This document shows, piece by piece, positions 10,065-61,118 of a DNA stretch of 64,000 nucleotides. Each line of letters opens with the position of its first letter. The stretch's first letter is position 1. The notes beneath the pieces are model-generated. The model saw only the letters and a list, made by a program, of their open reading frames with translations, made no database searches and was not told where the DNA came from. Both the position numbers and the translations under genes were made by a program. The stretch is from IMG/VR virus record IMGVR_UViG_3300028654_000001, positions 186,001 through 250,000 of that record; one strand, 5' to 3'.

Positions 10065-10399
10065 ATGACCCCTCATTGCCAACTTGATGATTTCAATGAG
10101 AGCGTCAATATGAAATGGCTTGGCCAAAAAGTAAGGAAATCCCTCGACCTCGGGCCACCCTGAGATTACAATGAACCTTTCCTTCATTGCCGGGTACTTA
10201 CCCAGAATCCACTTGTACAGGTCATCAGCAGATCCAGATCCAAGCCTCAAGTCTGAGACAACTAAGTCAATCAGCTCGTTATCTAGGAGTAGCTTGGCTT
10301 CGTCGAGGGTCGAAGCCGCCTCGACGATGTAGCCCGAAGAAAGGTGCAGAACATCTTTCTCAAAATGGGCTTGTCTTCCACCAATAGAACGTGTTTCAT
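10056..10399 (-). pseudogene. second REC-domain gene, frameshifted near 10336-10343
   Basis: MKHVLLVEDKPILRKMFCTFL continues in another frame as SGYIVEAASTLDEAK..DLVVSD..KPF; paralogous to 9511..9858. Confidence 0.8.
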
Positions 10400-10428
10400 A
10401 CTCTTTACTTCAGAGAAAATAGTTATGT

Positions 10429-11403
10429 CTAGGTAGTATCGGTTTGGTAAGACCACTGAAATCCCTTATATACCCTACCACTTTTACATAGTGACCTTAG
10501 GGTCATACCTGAGATACCGCATTTAGTGGTGGCTTCTTTGGAGCTTGAATACAACTCCATAGTATCAAGCCCAACTTTCTGAATCCTACGAACTCTGAAC
10601 TTGGCCATCGGGTAGTGAGCATGAGCATGTCTATTGTTTTCACTCTGAGTCGCCCACTCCAAGTTATCAGCCCTATTGTCTATTTTGTTGAGGTTCTGGT
10701 GGTTCACCGTTAGGTCAAGAGAGGTGAATCCTTCAGGAAGTGGTAAGAATGCTAATGCCACAAGACGATGGACTGAAACCTTGGACCCTGCTAGATCTAC
10801 AGTTAGATATGGGTCACCACTACCGTAGGTTACCCTACCGCCTTTCAATCGGACTCGACCTAGGGATGATACCTCAACAGTTTTGTCATTGAATTGTGTG
10901 TTAGCCCACCTCTCACCGGGTAGCTCTTTAGTAGCGTATGCCCACTTAACTCCATACGCTCCTCGAATCCTACCTTGACACGCTAGCCAGATACGGGAGT
11001 AATCATGCGGGATTGACCTTATTGAGGGCCACTCTTTGATAACCTGACCATTCTGATCAAGCTGTAGGACAGCCCTGGAACTAGTTTTTGATCCTGTTGA
11101 GCGGGCAAGCCTTCTGTGATCTCCAGTAGTTGCCCATTCAAGATTTCCTACTCGATTGTCCTTTGTATTCTGGTTCTTGTGGTGGACGATCATATCCTTT
11201 ATCGGAGAATTCCCTAGAAAAGTAAGTGCAACGAGCCTATGTACATGAATCGTGGTTTTCTTTCCGCCTACTGATAGTACAACACTATGGTACCTACCTG
11301 ATTTAGATCCTCTTAGCACATAACTGTCCGGGTTCCGTACTTGACCAGAATCCGATATCTCATACTTTTGAAAGGGTTCTGGTGCGCTTAGCCACTTTTC
11401 CAT
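10429..11403 (-). CDS. NUMOD4/HNH homing endonuclease with two HNH modules
   Basis: YEISDSGQVR, VHRLVALTF..HHKNQNTKDNRVGNLEW and a second VHRLVALAF..NHQNLNKIDNRADNLEW. Confidence 0.9.
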   Translation of the reverse strand: MEKWLSAPEPFQKYEISDSGQVRNPDSYVLRGSKSGRYHSVVLSVGGKKTTIHVHRLVALTFLGNSPIKDMIVHHKNQNTKDNRVGNLEWATTGDHRRLARSTGSKTSSRAVLQLDQNGQVIKEWPSIRSIPHDYSRIWLACQGRIRGAYGVKWAYATKELPGERWANTQFNDKTVEVSSLGRVRLKGGRVTYGSGDPYLTVDLAGSKVSVHRLVALAFLPLPEGFTSLDLTVNHQNLNKIDNRADNLEWATQSENNRHAHAHYPMAKFRVRRIQKVGLDTMELYSSSKEATTKCGISGMTLRSLCKSGRVYKGFQWSYQTDTT

Positions 11404-11440
11404 TGAATCCCTGCATTGAGTTGGGTACACTGGCCCTGCC

Positions 11441-12793
11441 ATGAAAGTCCCAGAGAAAGTTCATTTAATCTGCAGCACCCTAAAACAAGCAGGCTTTGAA
11501 GCTTGGGTTGTTGGTGGCGCAGTGAGAGACTCGCTCCTAGGTAAGGACGCCCATGACTTCGACTTAACTACTAACGCAAGACCTGAACTGATAAGTGGTT
11601 TATTCAGCCATGTCATTGAGACTGGCATTCAACATGGGACGGTTACTGTGATGTTGGAAGGTGAGGCCTACGAAGTCACCACCTTCCGTGGTGAGGGCGT
11701 CTATTCTGATGGTCGTCGACCTGATGAGATTCAATTCCTTGATCGAATAGACCAAGACTTAGCTAGGCGGGACTTCACTATGAATTCCATCGCCTATGAC
11801 CCAATTGGGAATGTATTTTGTGATCCATTCAACGGACGGTCTGACATTAGAACCAGAACCATCCGAGCTGTTGGGGATCCCGTGGAGAGATTCTCAGAGG
11901 ATGGCCTACGAAGTCTTCGAGCCCTGAGATTTATGGTTACCCTGGGTTTTGAGGTGGATTCTCAGACCTACAAGGCTATCCCCATAACCCTCGGGACCTA
12001 CTCAAAAGTAAGTGCTGAACGAGTTCGGGATGAGTGGTTCAAGATCATGACCGCCCATCTTCCTTCAGAAGCTTTTCGAGCTATGGCTTACACAGGGATG
12101 TTGAATATTACAGTCCCTGAGATGATCCCCATGATCAATTGTACCCAAAACCGGTATCATGGGTTCGATGTCTGGGAGCACAGCCTCGCCACCCTTGATG
12201 CCTGTCCAGAAGAGGACCTAGTCCTTCGGTGGGGTGCATTGTTCCATGATATCGGGAAACCAAGATCCAAAGGGGTCCACCCAGAGCACGGGGACGCTAC
12301 CTTCTACAATCATGAGAATATCGGAGCTGATATGGCTATCGATATTCTATCTAGACTGAAGTTGTCCAATGAAGATCAGGAGAGGATCACTCATCTAATC
12401 CGCCACCACTTCATTCGATACAATTCCGAGTGGTCACCGGCTACCATCCGCCGGTGGGTTCGCCGGGTTGGTCTCGATAATGTAACTAGCTTGTGCACCC
12501 TTGCACGCGCCGACATCTTCGGAAAAGGTCATGCCAAAGTTCAGTTGGAAGAAGATCTCATCAACGAACTGGAATCCAAGATTGCCAACATGAGAGTCAC
12601 CGAGGTGCTGCCCACCTCGACCAAAGTCCTTACGGTCAATGGACACGATGTTATGATCCACTTGGGCATTGGCCCAGGGCCAACTATCGGAAAGGTTCTA
12701 ACAGCCCTTCTCGAGCTCGTGACAGACAATCCAGAGGTCAATACTCGAGAGAACCTGTTGACACTGGCCGAGACAATAGTAGCATCTACTTAG
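11441..12793 (+). CDS. cca: CCA-adding tRNA nucleotidyltransferase (class II) with HD domain
   Basis: VGGAVRD, DFDLTT, RRDFTMN, EDGLRSLRALRF, SAERV, HDIGKP motifs. Confidence 0.92.
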   Translation: MKVPEKVHLICSTLKQAGFEAWVVGGAVRDSLLGKDAHDFDLTTNARPELISGLFSHVIETGIQHGTVTVMLEGEAYEVTTFRGEGVYSDGRRPDEIQFLDRIDQDLARRDFTMNSIAYDPIGNVFCDPFNGRSDIRTRTIRAVGDPVERFSEDGLRSLRALRFMVTLGFEVDSQTYKAIPITLGTYSKVSAERVRDEWFKIMTAHLPSEAFRAMAYTGMLNITVPEMIPMINCTQNRYHGFDVWEHSLATLDACPEEDLVLRWGALFHDIGKPRSKGVHPEHGDATFYNHENIGADMAIDILSRLKLSNEDQERITHLIRHHFIRYNSEWSPATIRRWVRRVGLDNVTSLCTLARADIFGKGHAKVQLEEDLINELESKIANMRVTEVLPTSTKVLTVNGHDVMIHLGIGPGPTIGKVLTALLELVTDNPEVNTRENLLTLAETIVAST

Positions 12794-12804: not shown

Positions 12805-13557
12805 ATGCTAATTCTCGGAATAATGGCGATTATACTGGTACTAACCATCTGTGTATCCACCGTTGTTTATTTTCTTGGTAAATACCACAAGGCAAAGGAT
12901 GAGGCTGAGAAACAGAGGTTGAGAGCGGTATCCGCTGAGAATTCTGCTCGAGTGGCTGCTGGACAACGACCGATACCTGGGAGTGGGGTTGATGCTAGTG
13001 AATTAGCAGCTAGGTATAGAACACCTTCCCCACCTGAACCCCCTCCAAACAGAACTGAGTCAGGAAGAGTTTCAACCCGACCAAGGACACGGCCAAGATC
13101 TCGTCAAAGTATGGAGTCCTCTTTCACTGATCTATTCAGTAGCATGAGTGAGCAGATGACCCAAGTCTTTACTGGGGTGTCTCAAGCAGTGAGCGTGGTT
13201 AGTGAGCAAGCTACCCTCTCTGTAGCCATAGCTCGGGATGCTCAATCCCTATTGAATCTTGGGTTTGTTCAAGAAAATATTCAACTTGATCAAAGTCGGA
13301 GGTCTAACTTACAACACCTGAGTCTCATTCCTGGAGTATCCTCTCGAACGGTCACTGCACTACAGAGGCTTGAAACTTCGAATCGTATAGCTGAGCACCT
13401 TAACTGGGGGCGACTAGTAATCCAATTCATGCGTATGATTGACTCTGGTGGGATAACCTTCGAGAACGAGAACAAGGCTCCTGAACCAACTACTGCTAAG
13501 GAACCAGAGCCCGAGAAGCTACCTCCAACAAGGTTTGAGCGCGAGGATGTGATATGA
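12805..13557 (+). CDS. membrane-anchored hypothetical protein with C-terminal TRFER tag
   Basis: N-terminal TM helix; ends EKLPPTRFEREDVI; shares a domain (..NR..WG..MR..SG..) with the next gene. Confidence 0.8.
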   Translation: MLILGIMAIILVLTICVSTVVYFLGKYHKAKDEAEKQRLRAVSAENSARVAAGQRPIPGSGVDASELAARYRTPSPPEPPPNRTESGRVSTRPRTRPRSRQSMESSFTDLFSSMSEQMTQVFTGVSQAVSVVSEQATLSVAIARDAQSLLNLGFVQENIQLDQSRRSNLQHLSLIPGVSSRTVTALQRLETSNRIAEHLNWGRLVIQFMRMIDSGGITFENENKAPEPTTAKEPEPEKLPPTRFEREDVI

Positions 13558-14603
13558 GACCATTGTTTGATGGATGGGCCTTGCTCGCCTTCCTGTTCTG
13601 GATGGGTTTCTGCTGGCTCCTCTGCGTACGAAGATTGTTCTGGGGTTCCTTGGTAAGGAACTTCATCACAAGTGTCTTCTTTGCAATCTCTGGTATTGCA
13701 CTCCTCTTCCTAGCAACTAGGCCTTGGATTAACACGGCCCACATCCCTCATGGAGTCAACTTTCCGCCCCCGAAGTACAATAGTGAGATCCTAAATCTTG
13801 TAGGATCAATGTGCCTGACTCTATCCCTCGCCATCAGGGTAGTAATTCAACCGATCCCTACGCCATGCCCAAGAGTCTTGGTTTCGGATGAGAACATATC
13901 TCACCTTAGAGGTACTTGGCACATCATTGATGAGGTCAGGGTTCGAGTGGGGGACATCGTAATCCTTATAAATCAGAATCGAGCTGTAGATAACGGAGCT
14001 TGGGAAGTCAGAAAGCCACCCTGGCGCAGACCTCAATCAAATCAGAAGGGCTACCATTCCTTTGGTTCTTGGTTCATTGCTAATTGTGGTAACAAGTATG
14101 CTCATACTCTATGGGTGGGATCATTATGCCGCAATGACATCATCGGTGAGGGTGAACTCGAGTGGAAGCAACTCGATCTAAACAGCAGAATACGAACTTT
14201 CGTGAGCCTCGAGATACCCTGCAGTATTGGTGAGACCGCCAAGTTCCTTCTTCGAGTAGGAGTACTTCCATACCAGATTCGATGCAATCTCCAAGAAGAA
14301 GCAGTTAGGGACCTTTTGCAAGCAGGACACATATCACCAACCTCAGTAGGTATCCTACTGCACAAGCCTGACCCTAATCGGAACTCTACTGAGTGGGGTC
14401 CTCGAGTCAAAGCGGTGATGAGGTTGCTCATTCACTCGGGTGAGTTTGAATACCCCAAGGAAGCCTACGAGAGTGCAGTAACTAATGGGTTCGAGCACCG
14501 TATGACTGAGACTGAGGTGAGGGCTGACTTCGAGGTTCGAGTTAGGAACGAAACCCCAGAACCTCGAACCCCGACTAGGTTCGAAAGAGATGAAGTGATA
14601 TGA
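13554..14603 (+). CDS. multi-TM protein with tail-fibre-like domain and TRFER tag
   Basis: Three hydrophobic segments; VGDIVILINQNRAVDNGAW; ends PTRFERDEVI. Confidence 0.75.
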   Translation: MRPLFDGWALLAFLFWMGFCWLLCVRRLFWGSLVRNFITSVFFAISGIALLFLATRPWINTAHIPHGVNFPPPKYNSEILNLVGSMCLTLSLAIRVVIQPIPTPCPRVLVSDENISHLRGTWHIIDEVRVRVGDIVILINQNRAVDNGAWEVRKPPWRRPQSNQKGYHSFGSWFIANCGNKYAHTLWVGSLCRNDIIGEGELEWKQLDLNSRIRTFVSLEIPCSIGETAKFLLRVGVLPYQIRCNLQEEAVRDLLQAGHISPTSVGILLHKPDPNRNSTEWGPRVKAVMRLLIHSGEFEYPKEAYESAVTNGFEHRMTETEVRADFEVRVRNETPEPRTPTRFERDEVI

Positions 14604-14824
14604 GAGCCTCGAAGTCTGTACTTCAGGTTATGTTATTCCTGGTCATACTGCTATTGTTGTACTTGGAATTGCAACATGTTATTTTTAGGATCAACAAAAA
14701 GTCTGTAGCTACCACCACGGTACCGACTCCATCATCTGCCAAGGTAGTACCATGCGCTCCAAGTGCTACTGCTGATGTGAGAACCCAACATGAGGATAAA
14801 ACTAGCCTATCAGAAGATACCTGA
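14600..14824 (+). CDS. small single-pass membrane protein
   Basis: Hydrophobic VMLFLVILLLLYL; ATGA coupling. Confidence 0.6.
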   Translation: MRASKSVLQVMLFLVILLLLYLELQHVIFRINKKSVATTTVPTPSSAKVVPCAPSATADVRTQHEDKTSLSEDT

Positions 14825-15425
14825 TACCCACAACTGCCCGCTCAAGAAATGCATAGCCTTTGAGAAGTACGATGGTACCAACATCCATTGGGTTGCACAG
14901 CCCGAGTGGGGTTGGGTAGACTACGGTACTCGTCGCGATCGATTCCCCTTCAATAACGGTGGAGATCAGAAGTTTGAGGAGGCTCATCCAGAACTATCTG
15001 GGGTTTCTAGGTTGTGGGACCCAGATAGTAAGCTAGAGCATTATTTGAGGGGTAACTACAGCTCTGCCCAAGAGATTGTGGTGTTCACGGAGTACTTTGG
15101 CCCTAACTCGTTTGCTGGGATGCACAAGCCTGGTGACAAAATGCAGCTGGTCATCTTTGATGTCCAGATTGATGGCAACCTTCTCCAACCGGAAGAGTTT
15201 ATCACTGCCTTCAAGGGCTTCAACATCGCTCAGGTTGTCTTCAAGGGCAAGTACTCAGGACAGTTATTTGTTGATGTCCGTAAGGGCAAGTACGGCGTGA
15301 AAGAGGGTGTAGTCGTCAAAGGTGTAGCCGACGGTAATATCTATATGGCCAAAATCAAGACGAACGAGTATCTTGAACGTCTGAAGAGTAAGTTTGGAGA
15401 TTCCTGGCAAGAATATTGGGAGTAG
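14790..15425 (+). CDS. RNA ligase-like covalent nucleotidyltransferase
   Basis: Motif I EKYDGTN, EYFG, IFDV, motif IV EGVVVK, motif V AKIK. Confidence 0.8.
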   Translation: MRIKLAYQKIPDTHNCPLKKCIAFEKYDGTNIHWVAQPEWGWVDYGTRRDRFPFNNGGDQKFEEAHPELSGVSRLWDPDSKLEHYLRGNYSSAQEIVVFTEYFGPNSFAGMHKPGDKMQLVIFDVQIDGNLLQPEEFITAFKGFNIAQVVFKGKYSGQLFVDVRKGKYGVKEGVVVKGVADGNIYMAKIKTNEYLERLKSKFGDSWQEYWE

Positions 15426-15779: not shown

Positions 15780-16179
15780 TAACACCCTAGATCCGTCCGA
15801 GTTCAGAGATACTTTGGCCGTTCGGTTCGCACTTCCCCAGGAATGGGAGATGGAATCACGCGAGGGTATGGCTAGGTGTGGGGTTCTGTTGCGTGACGAA
15901 GTGAGCTTCCGAAGAAACACTTGGCTTCCGTTTGACATAACGGACATGTTTGAGGCCACTGTGTTCCTTCGTCAGGCTGCCCCAGAGGGGACTGATCGTA
16001 TCCAGTCCTGGGTTTACGAGGTCTACACTTGGTACCAGTCGCGGATGATGATCCCTTGGACGGTTACCTTGATCTACCACCCTGAAGGATGGCACTTCTG
16101 CTTTGGCCCTGCAGGACTCATCCAGGGCTTGAGGGTAATTCTTCCAGACTACATTCCACTATCGGGTCCTCAGACATAA
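15760..16179 (+). CDS. hypothetical protein
   Basis: Start set at 15760: GGTGTA 15745-15750 lies 9 nt upstream. Confidence 0.65.
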   Translation: MLLRIDDNTLDPSEFRDTLAVRFALPQEWEMESREGMARCGVLLRDEVSFRRNTWLPFDITDMFEATVFLRQAAPEGTDRIQSWVYEVYTWYQSRMMIPWTVTLIYHPEGWHFCFGPAGLIQGLRVILPDYIPLSGPQT

Positions 16180-16519
16180 CTCTCTGGAACCTGGTTTGGA
16201 CCCCACGTCGGCAATAAGCTGAGATTATCATGCTAGACATCTCATCTACGTGAGTTGCTCCGTGAACTTGCTCCATATGCTGAGCAAGTGGGGACCCAAG
16301 CCGGAGTCCCCACTTGTTGCGCAGGTACCTGCCCAAGGTATGGTGAAGCTCGGTCATTGCTGTCTTCTCGTTAGCCACACTGAGAAACAACCGAGTCTCC
16401 TCATTCAGCATACCATCAATTGCTTCAATTGCTTCATCAAGAGTAGTAGGATTAGGGTGCTCAATCCGAGTTGATGCGTGTAATGGGTAATCCTTGAGAG
16501 CCTTGTACTGAGGGATCAT
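16118..16519 (-). CDS. DUF6794-like protein with TRFQR tag variant
   Basis: HHTLGRYLRNKWGL..H.DEMS..II pattern; QTRFQRVM near the C-terminus. Confidence 0.65.
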   Translation of the reverse strand: MIPQYKALKDYPLHASTRIEHPNPTTLDEAIEAIDGMLNEETRLFLSVANEKTAMTELHHTLGRYLRNKWGLRLGSPLAQHMEQVHGATHVDEMSSMIISAYCRRGVQTRFQRVMSEDPIVECSLEELPSSPG

Positions 16520-18547: not shown

Positions 18548-18925
18548 ATGAAGCCGGGTGAGGTAATCGCAGAAGGTCTACTCGGCTTCTATGCCTGTGC
18601 TGTCCTCAACGATCTCGAGAAGATGGTGGTCTTACCCTCTGTTGTACTCGAGTCCGTCAAGGACAACTCAGGGGTAACCCCCGAATGGCCCCTTGGGGTC
18701 TATGTCCTGTTCACTGAGGATGGGGTCCTTCTTGGAATACACGGTAAGAACAAAGAGGGGGAGATACTCGACAGGTATAGTTTCTTTGACCTCGACGAGG
18801 ACACAATCCCGGATCTTGGTGAAGATATCTGGAACCTGTGGAAGGTCCTTCGTGAGGCCTCTGATGAGTTGGTCGAGGCCAACTATCAGGCTTTACTGAA
18901 GCAGACTCTGGAGTCTGAAAATTGA
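18548..18925 (+). CDS. hypothetical acidic protein
   Basis: Start set at 18548: GGTGTA 18532-18537 lies 10 nt upstream. Confidence 0.7.
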   Translation: MKPGEVIAEGLLGFYACAVLNDLEKMVVLPSVVLESVKDNSGVTPEWPLGVYVLFTEDGVLLGIHGKNKEGEILDRYSFFDLDEDTIPDLGEDIWNLWKVLREASDELVEANYQALLKQTLESEN

Positions 18926-19392
18926 TGCTTACAGTAGCTGACGTCATACCGACTGCAGAGGTTGGACAGTATTGGGTACATACCTTTCCCCTGTACATGT
19001 TTCGAGTTATAGCCGTTGATGTACAACAGTGGCAGTTCACCCTTGTCACTTGGATTGTCGGAGGGGTCCCTGAAGAGGATAGTTACTATATCGGGTATGA
19101 TACTTTTAAGGGATGCCGTAGACTTCACAACTCTGTAGTAATTGATCCCCATGCACTTAGCCTCAAGGAGATCCCTCGAACTGGAGACATTTTAGTTTTC
19201 CCAAGTGGGGAGTTGGTTTTCGTGGTTACCGATGGATCCCTAGTAACCCTGTACCATGATGGGGTTGTACCCAAAGACCCAGCTGTACTTTCCAAGCTTA
19301 AGCTATTTCAACGTGGCCCAGTCGACCCGAACCTAAAACCCACAACCAGATTCGAACGAGTGTTAGGTGATCATGCCCTTGACCCAGACTGA
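18922..19392 (+). CDS. hypothetical protein with TRFER tag
   Basis: Ends KPTTRFERVLGDHALDPD; paralogous to the next gene. Confidence 0.75.
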   Translation: MMLTVADVIPTAEVGQYWVHTFPLYMFRVIAVDVQQWQFTLVTWIVGGVPEEDSYYIGYDTFKGCRRLHNSVVIDPHALSLKEIPRTGDILVFPSGELVFVVTDGSLVTLYHDGVVPKDPAVLSKLKLFQRGPVDPNLKPTTRFERVLGDHALDPD

Positions 19393-19840: not shown

Positions 19841-20082
19841 CACCTGTAGTTATAAGTGGTACTGCCACCTACATGGATATACCCCAAAGAGGCGTTCACC
19901 ACCTTCTCCACACGCTGTGGACAAAAGCCGTAGGTACTGAGAATTACAACAAGAATGAGTGGAAGCAGCTGGCTGCTTACCTGTATGCTCTTATGGCCGA
20001 CCCTATGGCTTCCCAGAATATCATTGAAGTCGACAGGATACTTCAACCACCGACGCGGTTCGAGCGGGAGCCGGTGATCTAA
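19837..20082 (+). CDS. small protein with TRFER tag
   Basis: LHTLWTKAVG..Y.K.EW core; ends PPTRFEREPVI. Confidence 0.7.
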   Translation: MTPVVISGTATYMDIPQRGVHHLLHTLWTKAVGTENYNKNEWKQLAAYLYALMADPMASQNIIEVDRILQPPTRFEREPVI

Positions 20083-24443: not shown

Positions 24444-24767
24444 TTAGGAGTTATTGATCCGATCAAACCGAGTAGGTGGCTTATCCGTATACATAGTGGA
24501 CTGCGTGGTCCTTGCCACGTCTACGGAGGGTGGCTCTTCCTCCTCAACCTCTTCCTCCTCCACCTCAGGTTCCACTTGGTTGATGATCATAGGTTGTTGC
24601 GCAAAATTTGCGAGTAAGGCTTTCCACCCAAGAAGAATGTGGTTGGAGATAGTAGCTAGCAGATTGTAGGTAGATCCAATAACAACAATCACTATAAATG
24701 TAGCTAATCCTGGGTTGGCATGAACCCATATCCAGACCTGACTCATCACGGGGACAGTATACCCCAA
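24444..24767 (-). CDS. small membrane protein with TRFDR tag
   Basis: TM segment, acidic linker, ends KPPTRFDRINNS. Confidence 0.7.
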   Translation of the reverse strand: MGYTVPVMSQVWIWVHANPGLATFIVIVVIGSTYNLLATISNHILLGWKALLANFAQQPMIINQVEPEVEEEEVEEEEPPSVDVARTTQSTMYTDKPPTRFDRINNS

Positions 24768-32668: not shown

Positions 32669-33076
32669 GTGGCTTCCCCTCTTTTCAACTCTCAGAATCG
32701 CCCTCGGGCGGCTTCCCACTTAGCCGAGATTGACTTCGGCCGACTGGAAAAGTCTCGTAAAGAGAGCGGGAACGTCATCATAACCTACGAGACTTGCCCG
32801 GGTATTTTCCTACTGGCCTATGAGCAGGTTCATAATAGGAGCATCACATTTGCTCCGTTCCCAGTACCGAAGTACTGGGAACGACATGTGACCAGGGTTC
32901 ACTTACTGGTACCCGCTCCAGGCTCAATCAATCTCAAGAATGGGTCCCAAGTTACAACTATACCGGAGGATAGTGTAGCCCATGTTCTAGGGGCCATCCA
33001 GTATGTGCTAGAACAAGGTGGGTTCCAGGTAGTACTAGGTGCTCCAACTCGATTTGAACGAGCCGACGTGATTTAG
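32669..33076 (+). CDS. hypothetical protein with TRFER tag
   Basis: Ends APTRFERADVI; GGTGTA 10 nt upstream. Confidence 0.75.
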   Translation: MASPLFNSQNRPRAASHLAEIDFGRLEKSRKESGNVIITYETCPGIFLLAYEQVHNRSITFAPFPVPKYWERHVTRVHLLVPAPGSINLKNGSQVTTIPEDSVAHVLGAIQYVLEQGGFQVVLGAPTRFERADVI

Positions 33077-34847: not shown

Positions 34848-35597
34848 ATGCCAGCTGGAGCCTTTTGGCGCCTTCAGTACAGAGATGGCCTAGATCACAG
34901 AATTCAAGCTCGGGCTGATAGGCAAAGGTTTGCCCAAGACAGGAACGTCCTCACAGCCATTACTCGCTACCACGAGGGCGCTTTCGTTCTGGAGGTTCAG
35001 CTTGTCGATGATGCGGAGTCTACCTTCGATGGGAGTCTTCACGAGCTCTACAATCGACAGCAGTCCATTCGAAACCCACCGCCAGTGACTAGGACCATCT
35101 CCTCCTTAGCTAGATGGGGAAACACACCTGATTCAAATGGGATGGTCATAGATCCCCAAGTCAGGGAGAACATCATCAGTCAGTACATCCAAAGCTCAGG
35201 GGGTCGTCAACGATTGGCCCAGGCGATGGTAGCCCCTCTCCGAACACGACTAGACTACTCGGGGATGGCAAGACGGGTATTCATGGTTGAACCTCTCCAA
35301 GGAGGGGCCTTGCCCACCTACGACAAGGACATGGTCAGTGACTTCAACCCGCCCGACTGGGTCGACGCTGGCACGTGGGTCAAGAGTGACGATAAATACG
35401 CGATTATTGTGGCCACCGAGCCGAAGAATACCGAAAGCCTACCCTTCAACTCGGCTATAGTTGAATACCAGGTCTGGAGGGATTACGGGCCTCCAAAGAG
35501 GCTTGACGCGGAAACCTTCTGTAAGTACTGGTTACCATCCGAGACTCCAGCAGAGCCTAGAACCCGATTCGAACGAATTCTGATGGACGATGATTGA
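34848..35597 (+). CDS. mosaic protein: capsid-like segment + PxW domain + TRFER tag
   Basis: IISQYI..GRQRLAQAMVAPLR.RLDY...RRVFMVEPL..GALPTYDKD; ends PRTRFERILMDDD. Confidence 0.75.
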   Translation: MPAGAFWRLQYRDGLDHRIQARADRQRFAQDRNVLTAITRYHEGAFVLEVQLVDDAESTFDGSLHELYNRQQSIRNPPPVTRTISSLARWGNTPDSNGMVIDPQVRENIISQYIQSSGGRQRLAQAMVAPLRTRLDYSGMARRVFMVEPLQGGALPTYDKDMVSDFNPPDWVDAGTWVKSDDKYAIIVATEPKNTESLPFNSAIVEYQVWRDYGPPKRLDAETFCKYWLPSETPAEPRTRFERILMDDD

Positions 35598-35931: not shown

Positions 35932-36297
35932 ATGATGAGGGTTCTGATCATTGATTCATACGCCAAGGAAGAAGCAGACAAGGTAGTCAAGTTTGCGTTC
36001 CGCCCAGAGAATCTTTACCGTCCAGGGACTACCGCCAGGATCCCAGGAAATGTGAGGAAGCATATCCTTGTACTCGGGGACTACAAGATAGTCTTCTCGT
36101 TGACACGAGATCCTCAAACTGGTGAGGTTTTCAGACACCTCTCAATGTCGGTTCCAACTCTAGGGGCCTTCCCACACCCTGCAGCGATAACCGAGGTCAT
36201 CGACCTATTTGGATTCAAGGGGGGTTTGTGTAACTGTCAACTCGATGCAAATAGAGTTGATAATTGCATCACAGTAGCTCAGAACCTCGAATCTTAG
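35932..36297 (+). CDS. hypothetical protein
   Basis: VFS..RHLSMSVP..PHP pattern. Confidence 0.75.
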   Translation: MMRVLIIDSYAKEEADKVVKFAFRPENLYRPGTTARIPGNVRKHILVLGDYKIVFSLTRDPQTGEVFRHLSMSVPTLGAFPHPAAITEVIDLFGFKGGLCNCQLDANRVDNCITVAQNLES

Positions 36298-36680
36298 ATC
36301 ACATCCTCCCTCTCAAATCGAGTTGGAGGGAGTTTTTCTTCTACCACCTTCTCTCTTTTGCGACTTAGGACCTGTGGCTTTGGGGCTGGACGCCACTTAT
36401 CTAGGACATCTTTTAACCAACGAGAGATGGCTGACTTCGGGTTACCTTCACGTTCGAAGTGGATGTAGTTGTTCCCACCTGAAACTACCCGTATACCTGT
36501 TATTACGAACACAGGCATATCATAGGGTGTAGGGTTTTCGGGCAGGTTACGACAAACCCAATCAGGTCCTTCAGGGAATAGTGAGGTAATCTTGGATGGT
36601 GGAAGTGGGATTATCTTACTCCCCACTGCAACCCAACTATCATCCTTTGGAGCTTTCCAGGGGTCTTTGATCCGAGGCAT
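36294..36680 (-). CDS. PxW-domain protein with TRFER tag
   Basis: Ends EKLPPTRFEREDVI. Confidence 0.75.
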   Translation of the reverse strand: MPRIKDPWKAPKDDSWVAVGSKIIPLPPSKITSLFPEGPDWVCRNLPENPTPYDMPVFVITGIRVVSGGNNYIHFEREGNPKSAISRWLKDVLDKWRPAPKPQVLSRKREKVVEEKLPPTRFEREDVI

Positions 36681-36718
36681 TAGTTACCACTACACCGGTG
36701 TAAGTGGTAACTAATGCC
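36676..36718. promoter_or_regulatory. palindromic divergent promoter region (two back-to-back GGTGTA motifs)
   Basis: ggcattagttaccactacacc|ggtgtaagtggtaactaatgcc; perfect inverted repeat except one extra A. Confidence 0.7.
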
Positions 36719-37754
36719 AACGTGGAGGATTGAGTACCCTAGCCTACTTGCAAACGATAGAACACAGCTATACGCCGAGTGGGCTCTCATCCGAAACGAT
36801 CCTATGCTGACAAACTGTGAGACTACAGAAAGTCAGGACAACCCAATAACGATACTTACAGCCTCTTTCCTTGGGTTTGGCCCTGAGAACCCCGCGGTCT
36901 CAGAGATTATCCGAAGGCGAGGGATCCTACAACTTCCTGTCAACATCCAGATGCCGCTTATAGTATCCCGTCTGGCATCCAACAGTGAAGGTAGGTATGA
37001 GGTCGTTAGGGATGACCAACCCAGGTTCGGTGATGGCAGGCATTCGAGACCAGACAGGTTGCGAGGACACACCATTAACGCGATCATGTTTGATGTTGAG
37101 GCTTCGTTCAATAGTGGGATCCCACTACATCCTGGGGATCTTGTCGGAGTGGATCCCGCTACTGGATTAGTTATCCGTGAGGGTTTGTCCTTACTCTCGA
37201 CTCCTCCCGTTGGGATTGTAGCTGGGGTTGATATCGCAGTTGGTAGTGATCGATCTGAGATTACCCTGGCTCGGAGAAGGTTCCCAGAAGATGCTGATAG
37301 AGCTTTCAGGCAAGAGTTCATGGGGGAATTCCCAGAAGAAGGCTCCCCGGTTAGAACTGAGCTGACAGTCCTCGCTGCGGATCCCCCAAGAGCCCCCATT
37401 GGGTTCACGGTGCATGAGCGGATTGGAATGGCAGTCATCAACCCACGTACAATCGAACGGATTCAGGCAACTAGGGTTAACGTACCCCTATTCGAACTTG
37501 AGAATAACCCACAAATCAACCTGAGTGACATACGAGAACGAAGACTTGACCTGATCGAGCGTTCGGTGCACTCGATCCAAGAACAAGAGGATCGGGAGAT
37601 CTTGGCCGCACTCGAGGGTACCTTCACGAACCAGCCGAGGCCTCCAGTGACCCCGACCCCAGTGGTGGCACCTGAACCTGTGGAGGAGAACTTCATCCGT
37701 AGAACCCGCTTCGAGCGTATCCTTGATGATACAGATGAACTGTACCCACTCTAA
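36714..37754 (+). CDS. mosaic protein with terminase-like and capsid-like fragments + TRFER tag
   Basis: LRGHTINAIMFD, GVDIAVGSDRS, FRQEFMGEF, RTELTVL, PLFELENNPQI..I.ERR.DLIER; ends RTRFERILDDTDELYPL. Confidence 0.75.
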   Translation: MPTWRIEYPSLLANDRTQLYAEWALIRNDPMLTNCETTESQDNPITILTASFLGFGPENPAVSEIIRRRGILQLPVNIQMPLIVSRLASNSEGRYEVVRDDQPRFGDGRHSRPDRLRGHTINAIMFDVEASFNSGIPLHPGDLVGVDPATGLVIREGLSLLSTPPVGIVAGVDIAVGSDRSEITLARRRFPEDADRAFRQEFMGEFPEEGSPVRTELTVLAADPPRAPIGFTVHERIGMAVINPRTIERIQATRVNVPLFELENNPQINLSDIRERRLDLIERSVHSIQEQEDREILAALEGTFTNQPRPPVTPTPVVAPEPVEENFIRRTRFERILDDTDELYPL

Positions 37755-38735: not shown

Positions 38736-39611
38736 ATGCCACTTCCAGATTGGGCTATCCTTGGATCCGTTATCTACCCACGGCCGCGTGATTCATATAT
38801 TAGAATCATAAGGGAATCTGGGGCTATCATAGTATATGCACTTCGAGAAGAGGTGCAGTTGAATCAGAACCATGTGGTATTCAGCGTAGACTCTGAAACT
38901 CTAGAGCATAACTGGATGCCACTTTCAGAAGCTGCACCCTTGTTTTCTGACTCAACTTATGGGCCAATGCCCTCCTGGTTTACAATTGGCTCGCGAATTA
39001 TTCAAAACCACAACAATCTGACTTACATAATCCTCTCTTTTGACCCTATCCGCTGGTCAATGACTGCAACATTAGAAGACGAAGTGAGTCCAACCAACTT
39101 CACGGTGACAAACTTCATTAGACATTGGAGACCCGCTAGCTCAATCACAGAGCAGAAACCCACTACGAATGTCACTAATATCGTTCAAGGTAGGGTTCAA
39201 GTTGCCCCAGATTGGTTGTATCCGGGGAAGTTCCTTAGAAGGAAAGTGAATCCAAATCACGTGTTTGTGGTCTCAAGCCTAGACCCAAGACGTTTCGTTG
39301 CAGTACTGACTAGACTGGATAGCCTAAGGCCGATGGTTCTTGGATCGATCTTTGAAGAAGCTGATTATTGCCGTATCGATGAACAGTTCACTCAAGTCGA
39401 CAGTACAGGGAGCCCAGCAGCTGAGTATACGTGCAAGAAGTGCGGTGAAACCGGCGAGAGAGACTACGACGCTGAGGAGAGACGAGCCAGCATCGACACT
39501 GTTAGGGCTTATACCTGCAAGAGGGGTCACACCTGGTACTTCGTGGCGGGTACCGATCAAGATGGTAAGCCAGCCAATCCAAGTAGATTTGAGCGTGATA
39601 TCGGCATTTAG
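38736..39611 (+). CDS. triple PxW-domain protein with Zn ribbon and SRFER tag
   Basis: LPDW/MPSW/APDW repeats, CKKC..CKRGH, ends PSRFERDIGI. Confidence 0.8.
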   Translation: MPLPDWAILGSVIYPRPRDSYIRIIRESGAIIVYALREEVQLNQNHVVFSVDSETLEHNWMPLSEAAPLFSDSTYGPMPSWFTIGSRIIQNHNNLTYIILSFDPIRWSMTATLEDEVSPTNFTVTNFIRHWRPASSITEQKPTTNVTNIVQGRVQVAPDWLYPGKFLRRKVNPNHVFVVSSLDPRRFVAVLTRLDSLRPMVLGSIFEEADYCRIDEQFTQVDSTGSPAAEYTCKKCGETGERDYDAEERRASIDTVRAYTCKRGHTWYFVAGTDQDGKPANPSRFERDIGI

Positions 39612-57800: not shown

Positions 57801-58046
57801 CTAATCTTCATCGTCTCTAAGAATCCGATCGAACCGAGTACTCCCAAGAAGCGTTGTACTCGGTTTACTAGACACCGATGGCACTTCATCGGTGTCTAGA
57901 ATTCGATCGAATCGAGTTGGTCGAGAAGTACTTTGGGTATCTGGTACTTGACTCCGAATAGGCTCTACACCCGCTTGACTTTTAGGCTCTTGTTTTCTAC
58001 GAGACATAAGAGTGTAGAAGTCATCTGTCCAAAAACCGCCGCCCAT
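57801..58046 (-). CDS. mini-protein: copy of the vWA N-terminus + two TRFDR tags
   Basis: MGGGFWTDDFY vs MGGGSWSHDFY; PTRFDRIL and STRFDRIL. Confidence 0.8.
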   Translation of the reverse strand: MGGGFWTDDFYTLMSRRKQEPKSQAGVEPIRSQVPDTQSTSRPTRFDRILDTDEVPSVSSKPSTTLLGSTRFDRILRDDED

Positions 58047-60656: not shown

Positions 60657-61118
60657 ATGCCAGTGCAAAGGCGAGGGCGTGCGGTTGACTTTGTAAAGGA
60701 AATCCTGAACCACGAGCACAGAGACTGGGTTCGATCCGATGACCCAAGCACTTCCAGTTGGGGCTTCGAGTGTCGGATTTGCAAATCCCGCTACCTAATA
60801 GCCATCGAAGCCTTCCGATACCAAGGGGGCGACCGCTACTCGAATGCTCTCCGAGATTGTGCAATGGATCCGAGAAAGGATCCATTGGAGACAGTTCTTG
60901 GGTTCGATTGTATCGCCTGTCATACGACTGAGGGCGTCAAACTGGAACCTTCAAGAACTCAATATGGTACAACGTATCCTCGAACGAGGTTCGAACGAAT
61001 ACTTGACCCTGAGCCAGAAGATCCTAACATCGACATCCCTCTCTGCCGAAGTTGCGCAGAGGATCATCATTCGTACTGGGATGAAATGTGGCAGATGGTT
61101 CGATATGATCAGATGTGA
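60657..61118 (+). CDS. Zn-finger protein with internal TRFER tag
   Basis: CRIC, CIAC, CRSC..H; YPRTRFERIL; GGTGTA 10 nt upstream. Confidence 0.75.
   Translation: MPVQRRGRAVDFVKEILNHEHRDWVRSDDPSTSSWGFECRICKSRYLIAIEAFRYQGGDRYSNALRDCAMDPRKDPLETVLGFDCIACHTTEGVKLEPSRTQYGTTYPRTRFERILDPEPEDPNIDIPLCRSCAEDHHSYWDEMWQMVRYDQM

What the first reader, a model, noticed from the sequence alone, without database searches (positions are those of the whole stretch)
13554..14603. Tail-fibre-like domain inside a tagged membrane protein
NISHLRGTWHIIDEVRVRVGDIVILINQNRAVDNGAWEV..PWRR..WFIANCG...TLWV resembles, from recall, the common virion fibre/decoration segment N(I)xLSG.Q.IDGV....GDRVLVKNQ.....NG.Y.V....W.R. 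Here it lies between three TM helices and a helical domain shared with upstream 12805..13557; both genes end in the tag. This would be another virion fragment in a non-virion context, possibly membrane-displayed.
Basis: partly seen in the sequence, partly recalled or inferred. Interest (0 to 1): 0.6.

Follow-up and report, generated by a model that had tools for sequence, protein, structure and literature searches.

The report
Tail-fibre module in a membrane protein
A 0.5-Mb soil phage makes a conserved membrane-anchored protein. It holds one copy of a domain normally found in tail fibres and capsid decoration proteins, facing the cytoplasm, and it ends in a 10-residue tag shared by about 50 other proteins of this phage.

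Summary
Window 13554-14603 (+) encodes a 349-aa protein (P0001) with four parts:
- three N-terminal TM helices;
- a ~105-aa beta domain (residues 105-210);
- a ~110-aa helical domain (residues 220-332);
- the C-terminal decapeptide PTRFERDEVI.

The beta domain is a true homologue of a module repeated in phage tail fibres and capsid decoration proteins. The evidence is PHROG matches at E 5e-7, 768 hits in a 1.8-billion-protein search, PDB 9NX3 at E 2e-24, the LME-1 tail fibre 9EFK, and BFVD fold matches at rmsd 1.7-3 A.

The helical domain is shared with the upstream, translationally coupled gene product P0002 (hhalign E 8e-6 with the tag removed).

The tag is real. There are 65 six-frame matches against about 3 expected by chance. 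51 of them lie within 9 residues of a stop. All synonymous codons are used.

The window belongs to a complete 512,571-bp phage genome from rhizosphere metagenomes. The gene lies among tRNA-repair genes, about 200 kb from the capsid module, and is under strong purifying selection (dN/dS ~0.09).

By charge distribution, the domain and the tag face the cytoplasm, not the outside. So "virion fragment in a non-virion context" holds, and "displayed" holds only for the inner face of the membrane.

Neither the function of the protein nor the reader of the tag has been identified.

The parts
13554..14603 (+). P0001, 349 aa: TM anchor, fibre-type beta module, helical domain and tag
   Evidence: ORF and translation. 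Seven orthologues at 67-81% identity, conserved along the whole length. dN/dS 0.08-0.10 against the L001 and L002 orthologues.
13572..13628 (+). TM helix 1 (residues 7-25)
   Evidence: Kyte-Doolittle 19-residue window, score 2.03.
13662..13718 (+). TM helix 2 (residues 37-55). It is preceded by the basic loop RRLFWGSLVRN.
   Evidence: Score 2.23. Loop 1 holds 3-4 K/R in all eight orthologues.
13788..13844 (+). TM helix 3 (residues 79-97)
   Evidence: Score 1.90.
13866..14183 (+). Fibre or decoration-type beta module (residues 105-210)
   Evidence: PHROG 2824 and 2647 matches. 768 relatives in the large protein search. PDB 9nx3_A at E 2e-24 and 9efk_AE at E 9e-6 by profile. AF2 block-mean pLDDT 90-97 over most of the module. 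BFVD: 80 matches at E<=1e-3 over about 105 residues, rmsd 1.7-3 A.
14211..14549 (+). Helical domain (residues 220-332), shared with P0002
   Evidence: AF2 predicts six helices; block-mean pLDDT is mostly 79-96, with lower stretches at the domain's two ends. hhalign against the P0002 family with the tag removed: 83.6%, E 8e-6. It occurs as a stand-alone domain plus tag in P0012, 137 aa. No convincing PDB fold match, best Z 4.4.
14571..14603 (+). C-terminal tag PTRFERDEVI plus the stop codon. Its last codon and the stop (ATA TGA) create the ATG of the next ORF.
12805..13557 (+). P0002, 250 aa: one N-terminal TM, a Pro/Arg-rich linker, a helical domain homologous to that of P0001, and the tag PTRFEREDVI. 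It overlaps the P0001 start by ATGA.
   Evidence: The same order, CCA-adding enzyme then P0002-like then P0001-like, is found in L001, L002 and the distant L144.
14600..14824 (+). 74-aa ORF with a hydrophobic N-terminal segment and no tag, coupled to P0001 by an ATGA overlap. It is not conserved in the relatives.
11441..12793 (+). Context: CCA-adding tRNA nucleotidyltransferase (PolyA_pol, HD and tRNA_NucTran2_2 domains)
14790..15425 (+). Context: RNA ligase (PF09414)

Best explanation
P0001 is a conserved, non-virion protein of a clade of roughly 0.4-0.6 Mb soil phages. It is anchored in the host cytoplasmic membrane and faces the cytoplasm.

Its parts:
- An N-terminal anchor of three TM helices (one in distant relatives) holds the rest at the inner face of the membrane.
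- Next comes one copy of a beta module otherwise found, often in tandem, in tail fibres and capsid decoration proteins.
- Then a helical domain that it shares with P0002, the product of the translationally coupled upstream gene.
- Then a flexible linker and the decapeptide PTRFER[DE][ED]VI.

I read the decapeptide as a short docking peptide recognised by one common reader. About 50 otherwise unrelated proteins of this phage carry it.

Proposed mechanism:
- P0001, probably together with P0002 through the shared helical domain, is the membrane-bound member of this tagged set.
- The borrowed fibre module serves as a binding or oligomerising head next to the membrane.
- The tag connects the protein to the same reader as the other tagged proteins.

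Shown: the architecture, the homology of the module, the homology of the C-domain, the reality and peptide-level selection of the tag, conservation and synteny.

Inferred: the topology, the P0001-P0002 pairing, the docking role of the tag, and what the module binds.
For: - Architecture and conservation.
- Module homology by sequence. By fold: model pLDDT 86.1, BFVD matches, Atlas rows with Phage_tail_fib and Mtd families.
- 9EFK orf22 has 18 chains. The paper describes the LME-1 tail fibres as six trimers (PMC12407071).
- C-domain shared with P0002. A stand-alone C-domain plus tag exists as P0012.
- Cytoplasmic orientation.
- Tag frequency: 65 six-frame matches against 1-5 in shuffles, 51 of them within 9 residues of a stop.
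- Tag selection at peptide level: all six Arg codons, both Phe codons (28 and 28) and all four Pro codons are used.
- Tag carriers: unrelated proteins, including a RecA-like P-loop protein and two proteins that hold pieces of the phage's own MCP.
- Concerted shift of the tag: in a distant relative it reads [ST]RY[EK]R.PVI on four neighbouring proteins, including the P0001 and P0002 homologues. This fits a co-evolving reader.
- Non-virion neighbourhood, conserved over about 30% protein identity.
Against: - No reader has been identified, and no expression or localisation data exist. All nine sequencing runs found are DNA runs from rhizosphere metagenomes.
- P0001-type proteins are absent from five complete or near-complete relatives. 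One of them carries 25 matches to the tag core. So P0001 is not a core part of the tag system.
- The topology rests on the positive-inside rule only. In the three-TM form loop 2 also holds 2-3 K/R.
- The C-domain homology with P0002 is moderate (83.6% probability) and rests on shallow alignments of 8 and 3 sequences.
- The helical domain has no informative fold match.
- What the module does in virions is itself unknown, so its role here cannot be transferred from them.
Confidence: 0.45

Rival explanations
1. The tag is a degradation or remodelling signal read by the phage's own ClpX, working like a genetically encoded ssrA-type tag. In this reading PTRFER is an adaptor- or N-domain-binding part and the terminal hydrophobic pair enters the pore. 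P0001 would then be one of about 50 phage proteins that are unfolded, extracted or degraded on schedule.
For: - G000 encodes a ClpX homologue with zf-C4_ClpX, AAA_2 and ClpB_D2-small domains, interrupted by a Hint/intein.
- All five relatives tested also carry a single Clp-type AAA_2 ATPase gene, and the N-termini of these ORFs align with the Cys-rich N-terminus of the G000 ClpX.
- From my own knowledge: ClpX reads C-terminal signals such as ssrA LAA and the MuA RRKKAI class, and its zinc-binding domain docks the C-terminal tail of SspB.
- The variant tags VSRYKRKPVI and VSRYKRDPVI resemble the basic-then-hydrophobic MuA class.
Against: - No ClpP was found in G000.
- The ClpX-like gene is present in relatives that have no tags above the control count. 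Its N-domain shows no obvious difference by eye between tag-rich and tag-poor phages.
- The second tag flavour (PTRFERIL followed by an acidic tail of variable length) does not end in a hydrophobic pair.
- A strictly conserved 6-10-residue motif is more specific than typical ClpX degrons.
- Binding was not tested.
Confidence: 0.2
2. The tag is a capsid-docking peptide. It would resemble an encapsulin cargo-loading peptide, or the shared C-terminal coat-binding end of phage 80alpha scaffolding protein and SaPI1 CpmB. Tagged proteins would bind the inside of the procapsid. Soluble ones would be packaged. Membrane-anchored P0001 and P0002 would tether assembling capsids or capsomers to the membrane.
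For: - The phage MCP (P0163, 289 aa, phrog_2522 at E 4e-52) lies next to a prohead protease and a Gln-rich scaffold-like protein.
- Its family also matches in Thermotoga maritima among the control genomes. I take that match to be the encapsulin, which is an inference.
- The tags are short, C-terminal, and several follow Pro/Glu-rich linkers on diverse proteins.
- Two tagged proteins contain pieces 47-56% identical to this MCP.
- Integrated low-GC elements in one deltaproteobacterial MAG encode small proteins with the same tag. This recalls satellites that copy a helper's capsid-binding motif.
Against: - An integral membrane protein cannot be luminal cargo.
- The tag does not resemble known encapsulin loading peptides.
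- The putative scaffold P0162 does not end in the tag.
- Relatives whose MCP is 92-98% identical range from 25 tags to none.
Confidence: 0.15
3. P0001 faces the periplasm and acts at the envelope. It could be a superinfection-exclusion or receptor-masking protein that uses a fibre-derived domain, or it could be a lysis (holin-like) protein.
For: - Fibre modules normally act outside the cell.
- Class I holins also have three TM helices.
- In the three-TM form, loop 2 is mildly basic.
Against: - In the single-TM relatives scanned, a strong basic cluster follows the TM and the N-terminus is uncharged.
- No TM segment separates the module from the tag. The tag sits on many proteins in which the hydropathy scan finds no hydrophobic N-terminal segment.
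- At 349 aa the protein is far larger than a holin, and no lysin gene is adjacent.
Confidence: 0.08
4. Proteins made of a virion fragment plus the tag (P0001 with a fibre module; window 34848-35597 and 36714-37754 with MCP pieces) are baits. The fragment would co-assemble with the matching virion protein, of this phage or of a competitor. The tag would hand the complex to the reader, for ordered assembly at the membrane or to poison a co-infecting phage.
For: - Three tagged proteins carry virion-derived pieces.
- The fibre module is widespread in other phages. G000 has at most one other, divergent copy.
Against: - This is purely inferential, and no interaction was tested.
- Most tagged proteins show no virion similarity.
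- The module may be a monomeric bead that has no homotypic contacts.
Confidence: 0.07

Closest known systems
Fibre / decoration beta module of tailed phages (PHROG 2647, 2824, 11518, 27782, 16867; PDB 9NX3 'capsid decoration protein' residues 24-131; Legionella phage LME-1 tail fibre, PDB 9EFK orf22 residues 261-388)
   Same: - About 105-residue beta domain with the motif LSG..IDGV....GD.VLL..Q.....NG.W.V....W.R.
- All near-invariant residues are kept.
- The predicted fold superposes on BFVD tail-fibre and decoration models at rmsd 1.7-3 A.
   Different: - The listed hits are mostly much larger proteins that often carry several copies, and the ten of them that I scanned are virion-type. Here there is a single copy directly after a membrane anchor, followed by a helical domain and the tag.
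- No other fibre domains are present.
- The gene sits among tRNA-repair genes.
- No Pfam model matches the module.
Encapsulin cargo-loading peptides, and the shared C-terminal coat-binding end of 80alpha scaffolding protein and SaPI1 CpmB (my own knowledge)
   Same: A short C-terminal peptide, in several cases after a flexible linker, is appended to unrelated proteins. An HK97 / encapsulin-like shell protein is present in the genome. The same motif also occurs on small proteins of integrated elements.
   Different: The sequence is unrelated to known loading peptides. About 50 proteins carry it rather than a few. Some carriers are integral membrane proteins. Binding to the MCP has not been shown.
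ssrA / SspB / ClpX recognition tags (my own knowledge)
   Same: A C-terminal tag of about 10 residues with a conserved inner part and a hydrophobic end. A ClpX with a zinc-binding N-domain is encoded by the phage.
   Different: The tag is encoded in the genes, not added by tmRNA. The sequence is different. The phage has no ClpP. The second tag flavour ends in acidic residues.
Peroxisomal PTS1 and similar C-terminal address signals of eukaryotes (my own knowledge)
   Same: A strictly C-terminal short motif is shared by many unrelated proteins.
   Different: This is an analogy only. No compartment or receptor is known here.

Membership tests
Phage fibre/decoration beta module (PHROG 2647/2824; 9NX3 N-terminal domain) | Significant profile match over the whole module | tested here: met
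   PHROG E 4.8e-7 and 5.1e-6. Reverse search: 768 proteins at E<=1e-3, the best module-only hits at about 1e-35. PDB profile hit 9nx3_A at E 2.1e-24.
Phage fibre/decoration beta module (PHROG 2647/2824; 9NX3 N-terminal domain) | Conserved core residues (G, D, Q, N-G, W, R, G) | tested here: met
   These are the near-invariant columns of the 82-sequence alignment A5. P0001 keeps G120, D126, Q141, N147, G148, W157, R159 and G179.
Phage fibre/decoration beta module (PHROG 2647/2824; 9NX3 N-terminal domain) | Same fold | tested here: met
   AF2 block-mean pLDDT 90-97 over most of the module. BFVD: 80 matches at E<=1e-3, about 105 columns, rmsd 1.7-3 A. Atlas rows aligned over model residues 10-115. 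Foldseek against PDB found nothing, and 9NX3 was reached by sequence only.
Tail fibre or capsid decoration protein (whole protein) | Virion attachment domain, further shaft or tip domains, or capsid-binding domain | tested here: not met
   Outside residues 105-210 there is no significant Pfam or PHROG match (best E 0.17). The rest is three TM helices and a helical domain with no virion match.
Tail fibre or capsid decoration protein (whole protein) | Gene lies in the structural module and the product is in the virion | tested here: not met
   The neighbours are a CCA-adding enzyme, an RNA ligase, an HNH endonuclease and a DUF6794 protein. The protease-scaffold-MCP module is at G000 about 403-408 kb, against 199.5 kb for P0001. 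Presence in virions cannot be tested with these tools.
Encapsulin-type cargo (cargo-loading peptide) | Short C-terminal peptide on cargo, plus an encapsulin / HK97 shell gene | tested here: met
   Tag at the extreme C-terminus. MCP of phrog_2522, whose control-genome match is Thermotoga maritima.
Encapsulin-type cargo (cargo-loading peptide) | Peptide binds the luminal face of the shell protein | not testable with these tools
The one in-silico attempt gave no verdict and is listed only under Tried and rejected.
ClpX substrates or adaptor-tethered substrates | A cognate ClpX is present | tested here: met
   zf-C4_ClpX (E 1e-8), AAA_2 (E 3e-24) and ClpB_D2-small in L145:3072-5447 (-).
ClpX substrates or adaptor-tethered substrates | Tag-dependent binding, unfolding or degradation | not tested
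   This needs biochemistry. The phage has no ClpP. ClpX-like genes also occur in relatives without tags.
Class I holin | About 100 aa with three TM helices, a short charged C-terminus, and a position next to an endolysin | tested here: not met
   The protein is 349 aa with a 250-aa folded C-terminal part. Distant homologues have a single TM. No lysin is adjacent.

The most novel reading that the evidence does not exclude
Some huge soil phages run a peptide-address system of their own.
- A genetically encoded C-terminal decapeptide, [ST]R[FY]xRxxVI-COOH, and a near-C-terminal variant, PTRFERIL followed by an acidic tail, mark about 50 proteins for one dedicated reader.
- P0001 and P0002 would be its membrane station.
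- Virion-derived pieces (the fibre module, the MCP N-arm and the MCP P-domain) would have been recruited as binding heads, to bring virion parts or a competitor's parts to that station.
- Integrated elements in the host lineage would have copied the address.
Probability: 0.15. Interest if true: 0.85.

Novelty: new variant of a known kind. Interest (0 to 1): 0.6.

Why it matters
- The fibre or decoration module is common in phages, with 768 relatives found here. It has no Pfam model and no assigned activity. A conserved single copy on the cytoplasmic side of a membrane protein shows it can work outside the virion, and it gives a simple protein in which to find its ligand.
- P0001 is also a convenient entry point to the C-terminal tag. 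This short motif is under peptide-level selection, sits on about a tenth of the phage's small proteins, and shifts in concert between lineages.
- I found nothing on such a proteome-wide C-terminal motif in phages in the papers searched.
- Finding its reader would explain how a 0.5-Mb phage sorts or times a large set of proteins.

Tried and rejected
- Whole-protein AF2 with the 8-sequence alignment failed, with pLDDT 36. It was replaced by residues 96-349 with an 82-row alignment.
- Foldseek against PDB gave no match at E<=1e-3. VIA-align against 48,161 chains gave a best Z of 4.4, below the noise level quoted by the tool. So the helical domain has no assigned fold.
- tblastn of P0001 against 50,697 deposited phage genomes found no match.
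- Pfam found nothing for P0001 or its parts.
- The language-model atlas returned only unnamed viral clusters.
- Paper searches for the tag strings, for jumbo-phage targeting signals, for phage ClpX and degrons, and for capsid targeting peptides found nothing on this motif.
- Complex prediction of the MCP (A6) with the last 45 residues of P0001 (A7) returned 'no answer', score 0.00.
- Idea rejected: the tag is a DNA-level repeat. All synonymous codons are used.
- Idea rejected: the tag is a feature of the host proteome. Of 185,579 species genomes, only one 8-Mb MAG holds it, at three loci of lower GC, and none of that MAG's 40 relatives does.
- Idea rejected: P0001 is a core part of the tag system. 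It is absent from G042-G046, although G044 has 25 matches to the tag core.
- Idea rejected: the module is a recent copy of this phage's own fibre gene. The only other copy in G000 is divergent.
- Read laying was not used, because no RNA run holds the locus.
Full report
**What the window is.** The window is bases 186,001-250,000 of a single 512,571-bp contig. IMG/VR classes it as a virus with direct terminal repeats, and CheckV estimates it 100% complete. GC content is 0.49. The locus occurs only in rhizosphere metagenome runs, and no RNA run holds it. The major capsid protein P0163 is an HK97-type protein of 289 aa. It is 85-98% identical to about 120 listed relatives, out of 2,031 hits, found on contigs up to 620 kb. 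It is also found on IMG/VR records of 286-529 kb. This is therefore a member of a large clade of huge soil phages.

**The observation.**
- 13554..14603 (+) is an ORF of 349 aa, P0001.
- Hydropathy gives three TM helices at residues 7-25, 37-55 and 79-97.
- P0001 has seven orthologues at 67-81% identity, conserved from the first to the last residue.
- dN/dS against two orthologous genes is 0.08-0.10 for the gene as a whole and 0.05-0.22 for the TM part, the beta module and the C-domain taken separately. Synonymous sites are close to saturation.
- The gene is real and constrained.

**The fibre-like segment.**
- Pfam has no match.
- PHROGs matches residues 110-210 to 'virion structural protein' (phrog_2824, E 4.8e-7 for the domain alone) and 'head decoration' (phrog_2647, E 5.1e-6). 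There is a weaker match to a 'tail fiber protein' family.
- Because the word search and the family scans left the protein open, I used the one large HMMER search, with the orthologue alignment. It gave 768 proteins at E<=1e-3. Almost all match profile positions ~103-210, in proteins of 500-4,800 aa with up to 11 copies each.
- Ten of these proteins were scanned. All match PHROG families that include ones labelled tail fiber, head decoration or virion structural protein. One carries the Mtd_N domain plus a tail-protein C-terminus. Two carry a tail-fibre C-terminal family.
It shows that P0001 keeps every near-invariant residue.
- A profile of that alignment hits two solved structures. One is 9NX3 'capsid decoration protein', residues 24-131, E 2.1e-24. 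The other is 9EFK orf22, residues 261-388, E 9e-6, with 18 chains. 9EFK is the portal-tail complex of Legionella phage LME-1, whose tail fibres are six trimers (PMC12407071).
- With the deep alignment, AF2 gives a confident model of residues 96-349: mean pLDDT 86.1, and block means of 90-97 over most of the module.
- That model matches 80 BFVD models at E<=1e-3 over about 105 residues, at rmsd 1.7-3 A. The named matches include tail fibre proteins, capsid decoration proteins and Mtd_N proteins.
- The ESM Atlas search returns Phage_tail_fib and Mtd clusters.

**The rest of the protein.**
- Residues 220-332 fold as six helices, with block-mean pLDDT mostly 79-96 and lower stretches at the two ends. 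No convincing structural relative was found, best Z 4.4.
With the tag removed, hhalign gives 83.6% probability and E 8.2e-6 over 80 columns. It lines up SIGETAKFLLRVGV..WGPRVKAVMRLLIHSGEF with SIARDAQSLLNLGF..WGRLVIQFMRMIDSGG. BLASTP sees only the tag.
- The domain also exists alone with the tag, as P0012 of 137 aa.
- P0002 (12805..13557) has one N-terminal TM, a Pro/Arg-rich linker, this helical domain and PTRFEREDVI.
- Its stop overlaps the P0001 start, and the P0001 stop overlaps the next ORF's start. Both junctions read GTGATATGAGA. The last tag codon plus the stop (ATA TGA) provides the next ATG.

**Topology.**
- More distant relatives of the same architecture are P0031, P0043, P0051, P0054, P0063, P0120, P0159 and P0160 (264-335 aa, about 30% identity). 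All but P0043 have a single TM. It is followed directly by a basic cluster such as RRVRRRKPR or RDRMKRRTPR, with 3-7 K/R and at most one acidic residue. The short N-terminus has 0-1 K/R.
- In the three-TM form, loop 1 carries 3-4 K/R in 11 residues.
- By the positive-inside rule the module, the helical domain and the tag are cytoplasmic.
- The tag itself points the same way. It sits on many small proteins in which the hydropathy scan finds no hydrophobic N-terminal segment.
- The protein is therefore 'displayed' on the inner face of the membrane, not outside. This is an inference.

**Genomic context.**
- The order CCA-adding enzyme, then P0002-like, then P0001-like is kept in L001 (NCBI GCA_043956535.1) and L002 (Logan ERR4702564). 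It is also kept in the distant L144, whose P0001 homologue P0159 is about 31% identical.
- An RNA ligase follows within 1.5 kb in the close relatives.
- The prohead protease, a Gln-rich scaffold-like protein, a 210-aa protein and the MCP lie about 200 kb away.
- In G000 the module has no other clear copy. One divergent candidate lies in a 464-aa ORF at L151:2400-3794, hhalign 70.6% and E 3.9e-5.
- Relatives G042 and G046 carry the module in ORFs of 2,657 and 492 aa.

**The tag.**
- [TS]RF[ED]R occurs 65 times in the six-frame translation of G000, against 1-5 in shuffles. For 51 of the 65 the stop codon follows within 9 residues.
- There are two flavours. PTRFER[ED][DEP]VI sits at the exact C-terminus. 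PTRFER[IV]L is followed by a short acidic tail.
- Codon usage is free, with Phe TTC and TTT at 28 each, all six Arg codons and all four Pro codons. Selection is therefore on the peptide.
- Carriers are unrelated to one another. They include tandem arrays of small Cys-rich proteins, a RecA-like P-loop protein, a weak Tad2-like match, two further proteins with an N-terminal hydrophobic segment, and two proteins with pieces of the phage's own MCP.
- In L144 four neighbouring proteins, including the P0001 and P0002 homologues, end in [ST]RY[EK]R.PVI. Other distant homologues end in RSRY[ED]REPVI. This is a concerted shift, as expected if one reader co-evolves with the tag.
- A back-translated tag pattern finds 24 loci on eight IMG/VR contigs.
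- Among 185,579 species genomes it finds one 8-Mb MAG labelled 'uncultured delta proteobacterium'. There it marks small ORFs in stretches of lower GC next to chromosomal genes. None of that MAG's 40 relatives has it.
- Among complete relatives whose MCP is 92-98% identical, counts of the tag core are 25, 14, 3, 2 and 2, with the last two at control level. Strict C-terminal tags number 8, 2, 0, 0 and 0.
- P0001-type proteins are absent from all five.
- The tag system is thus patchy, and P0001 is one of its clients rather than its core.

**Who reads the tag?** This is not known. There are two candidates.
- ClpX. G000 encodes a ClpX with a zinc-finger N-domain, an intein, and AAA_2 and D2-small domains, and has no ClpP. 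All five relatives carry a single Clp-type AAA_2 ATPase gene whose N-terminus looks the same. This includes the relatives without tags, and the N-domains show no obvious difference.
- The MCP. It belongs to a family that also matches in Thermotoga maritima. I take that match to be the encapsulin, whose cargo carries C-terminal loading peptides. However, membrane proteins cannot be luminal cargo, and the scaffold-like protein lacks the tag.

**Conclusion.**
This is a virion-type module in a non-virion, membrane-anchored, tagged protein, but it faces the cytoplasm.
- My best reading is that P0001, probably with P0002, is the membrane-bound member of a tagged protein set. The borrowed module would act as a binding or oligomerising head, and the tag as the link to a shared reader.
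- The rivals are a ClpX degron, capsid docking, periplasmic action and a bait function. They are listed with the tests that would separate them.

Noticed in passing
whole genome G000. In the window: 12805-13557, 13554-14603, 18925-19392, 19873-20082, 32669-33076, 34848-35597, 36714-37754, 38736-39611, 60657-61118 (+), and 24444-24746, 36294-36680, 57801-58046 (-): About 50 ORFs end in a C-terminal tag. It has two flavours, PTRFER[ED][DEP]VI-stop and PTRFERIL followed by an acidic tail. There are 65 six-frame matches against about 3 by chance, and synonymous codons are used freely. The 81-aa ORF at 57801-58046 carries two tags in tandem.
   Followed up: partly
window 34848-35597 (+) and 36714-37754 (+): Two tagged proteins contain pieces of the phage's own major capsid protein (P0163, G000 403,571-404,440). 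In the first, residues 101-161 match MCP 1-61 at 49% identity, E 4e-19. In the second, residues 212-255 match MCP 244-288 at 56%, and are directly followed by residues 254-302, which match MCP 84-136 at 47%. This is a permuted junction. I infer that it could form a P-domain without the A-domain. Both proteins also hit PDB 6wkk_A.
   Followed up: partly
G000 277,072-279,447 (-), locus L145:3072-5447 (outside the window): A phage-encoded ClpX with a C4 zinc finger, a Hint/intein insertion, and AAA_2 and ClpB_D2-small domains. No ClpP was found in the genome. A single Clp-type AAA_2 gene with a matching N-terminus is present in all five relatives tested. One of those ORFs (G042, 775 aa) is about as long as the intein-bearing G000 gene.
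   Followed up: partly
L016, L017, L055 (MAG 'uncultured delta proteobacterium MFD01476.bin.3.99', contigs CAWEUH010000027.1, CAWEUH010000040.1 and one more): This is the only one of 185,579 species genomes with the tag. At least seven ORFs of 86-377 aa end in [PR]TRF[EN]RE[DEP]VI. They lie in stretches of GC 0.51-0.53 next to chromosomal DNA of GC 0.58-0.63, beside primase-like genes. These may be integrated elements of the host lineage, which would be a possible host lead.
   Followed up: partly
window 13551-13560 and 14597-14606: Both tag-ending genes are joined to the next gene by the same GTGATATGAGA. The last tag codon ATA plus the TGA stop forms the next start codon.
   Followed up: yes
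window 24444-24746 (-): A third tagged protein with a strongly hydrophobic N-terminal segment: 100 aa, with an acidic linker, ending PPTRFDRINNS.
   Followed up: no
G000 288,766-289,425 (-), locus L006: A 219-aa RecA / DnaB-C / KaiC-like P-loop protein ending in PTRFEREDVI. It matches phrog_97 'UvsX-like recombinase' at E 6e-8, and its Pfam matches are below the family cut-offs.
   Followed up: partly
G000 491,399-492,793 (+), locus L151:2400-3794: A 464-aa ORF with a divergent copy of the fibre module at residues 240-325 (hhalign 70.6%, E 3.9e-5). The next ORF, of 607 aa, has a weak 'virion structural protein' match. This may be the phage's real fibre or decoration gene.
   Followed up: partly
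window 10429-11442 (-); L061:8111-11486 (G000 about 400.1-403.5 kb): Homing-type endonucleases are frequent. There is an HNH_3 / NUMOD4 protein next to the CCA-adding enzyme. Two LAGLIDADG / HNH proteins lie directly beside the MCP gene.
   Followed up: no
G000 10,102-10,578 (-), locus L012: A tagged 158-aa protein with a weak Tad2-like (Thoeris anti-defence 2) match, E 0.0027, below the Pfam cut-off.
   Followed up: no
window 16118-16519 (-): A DUF6794 protein (E 6e-19), conserved near the locus in L001 and L002.
   Followed up: no
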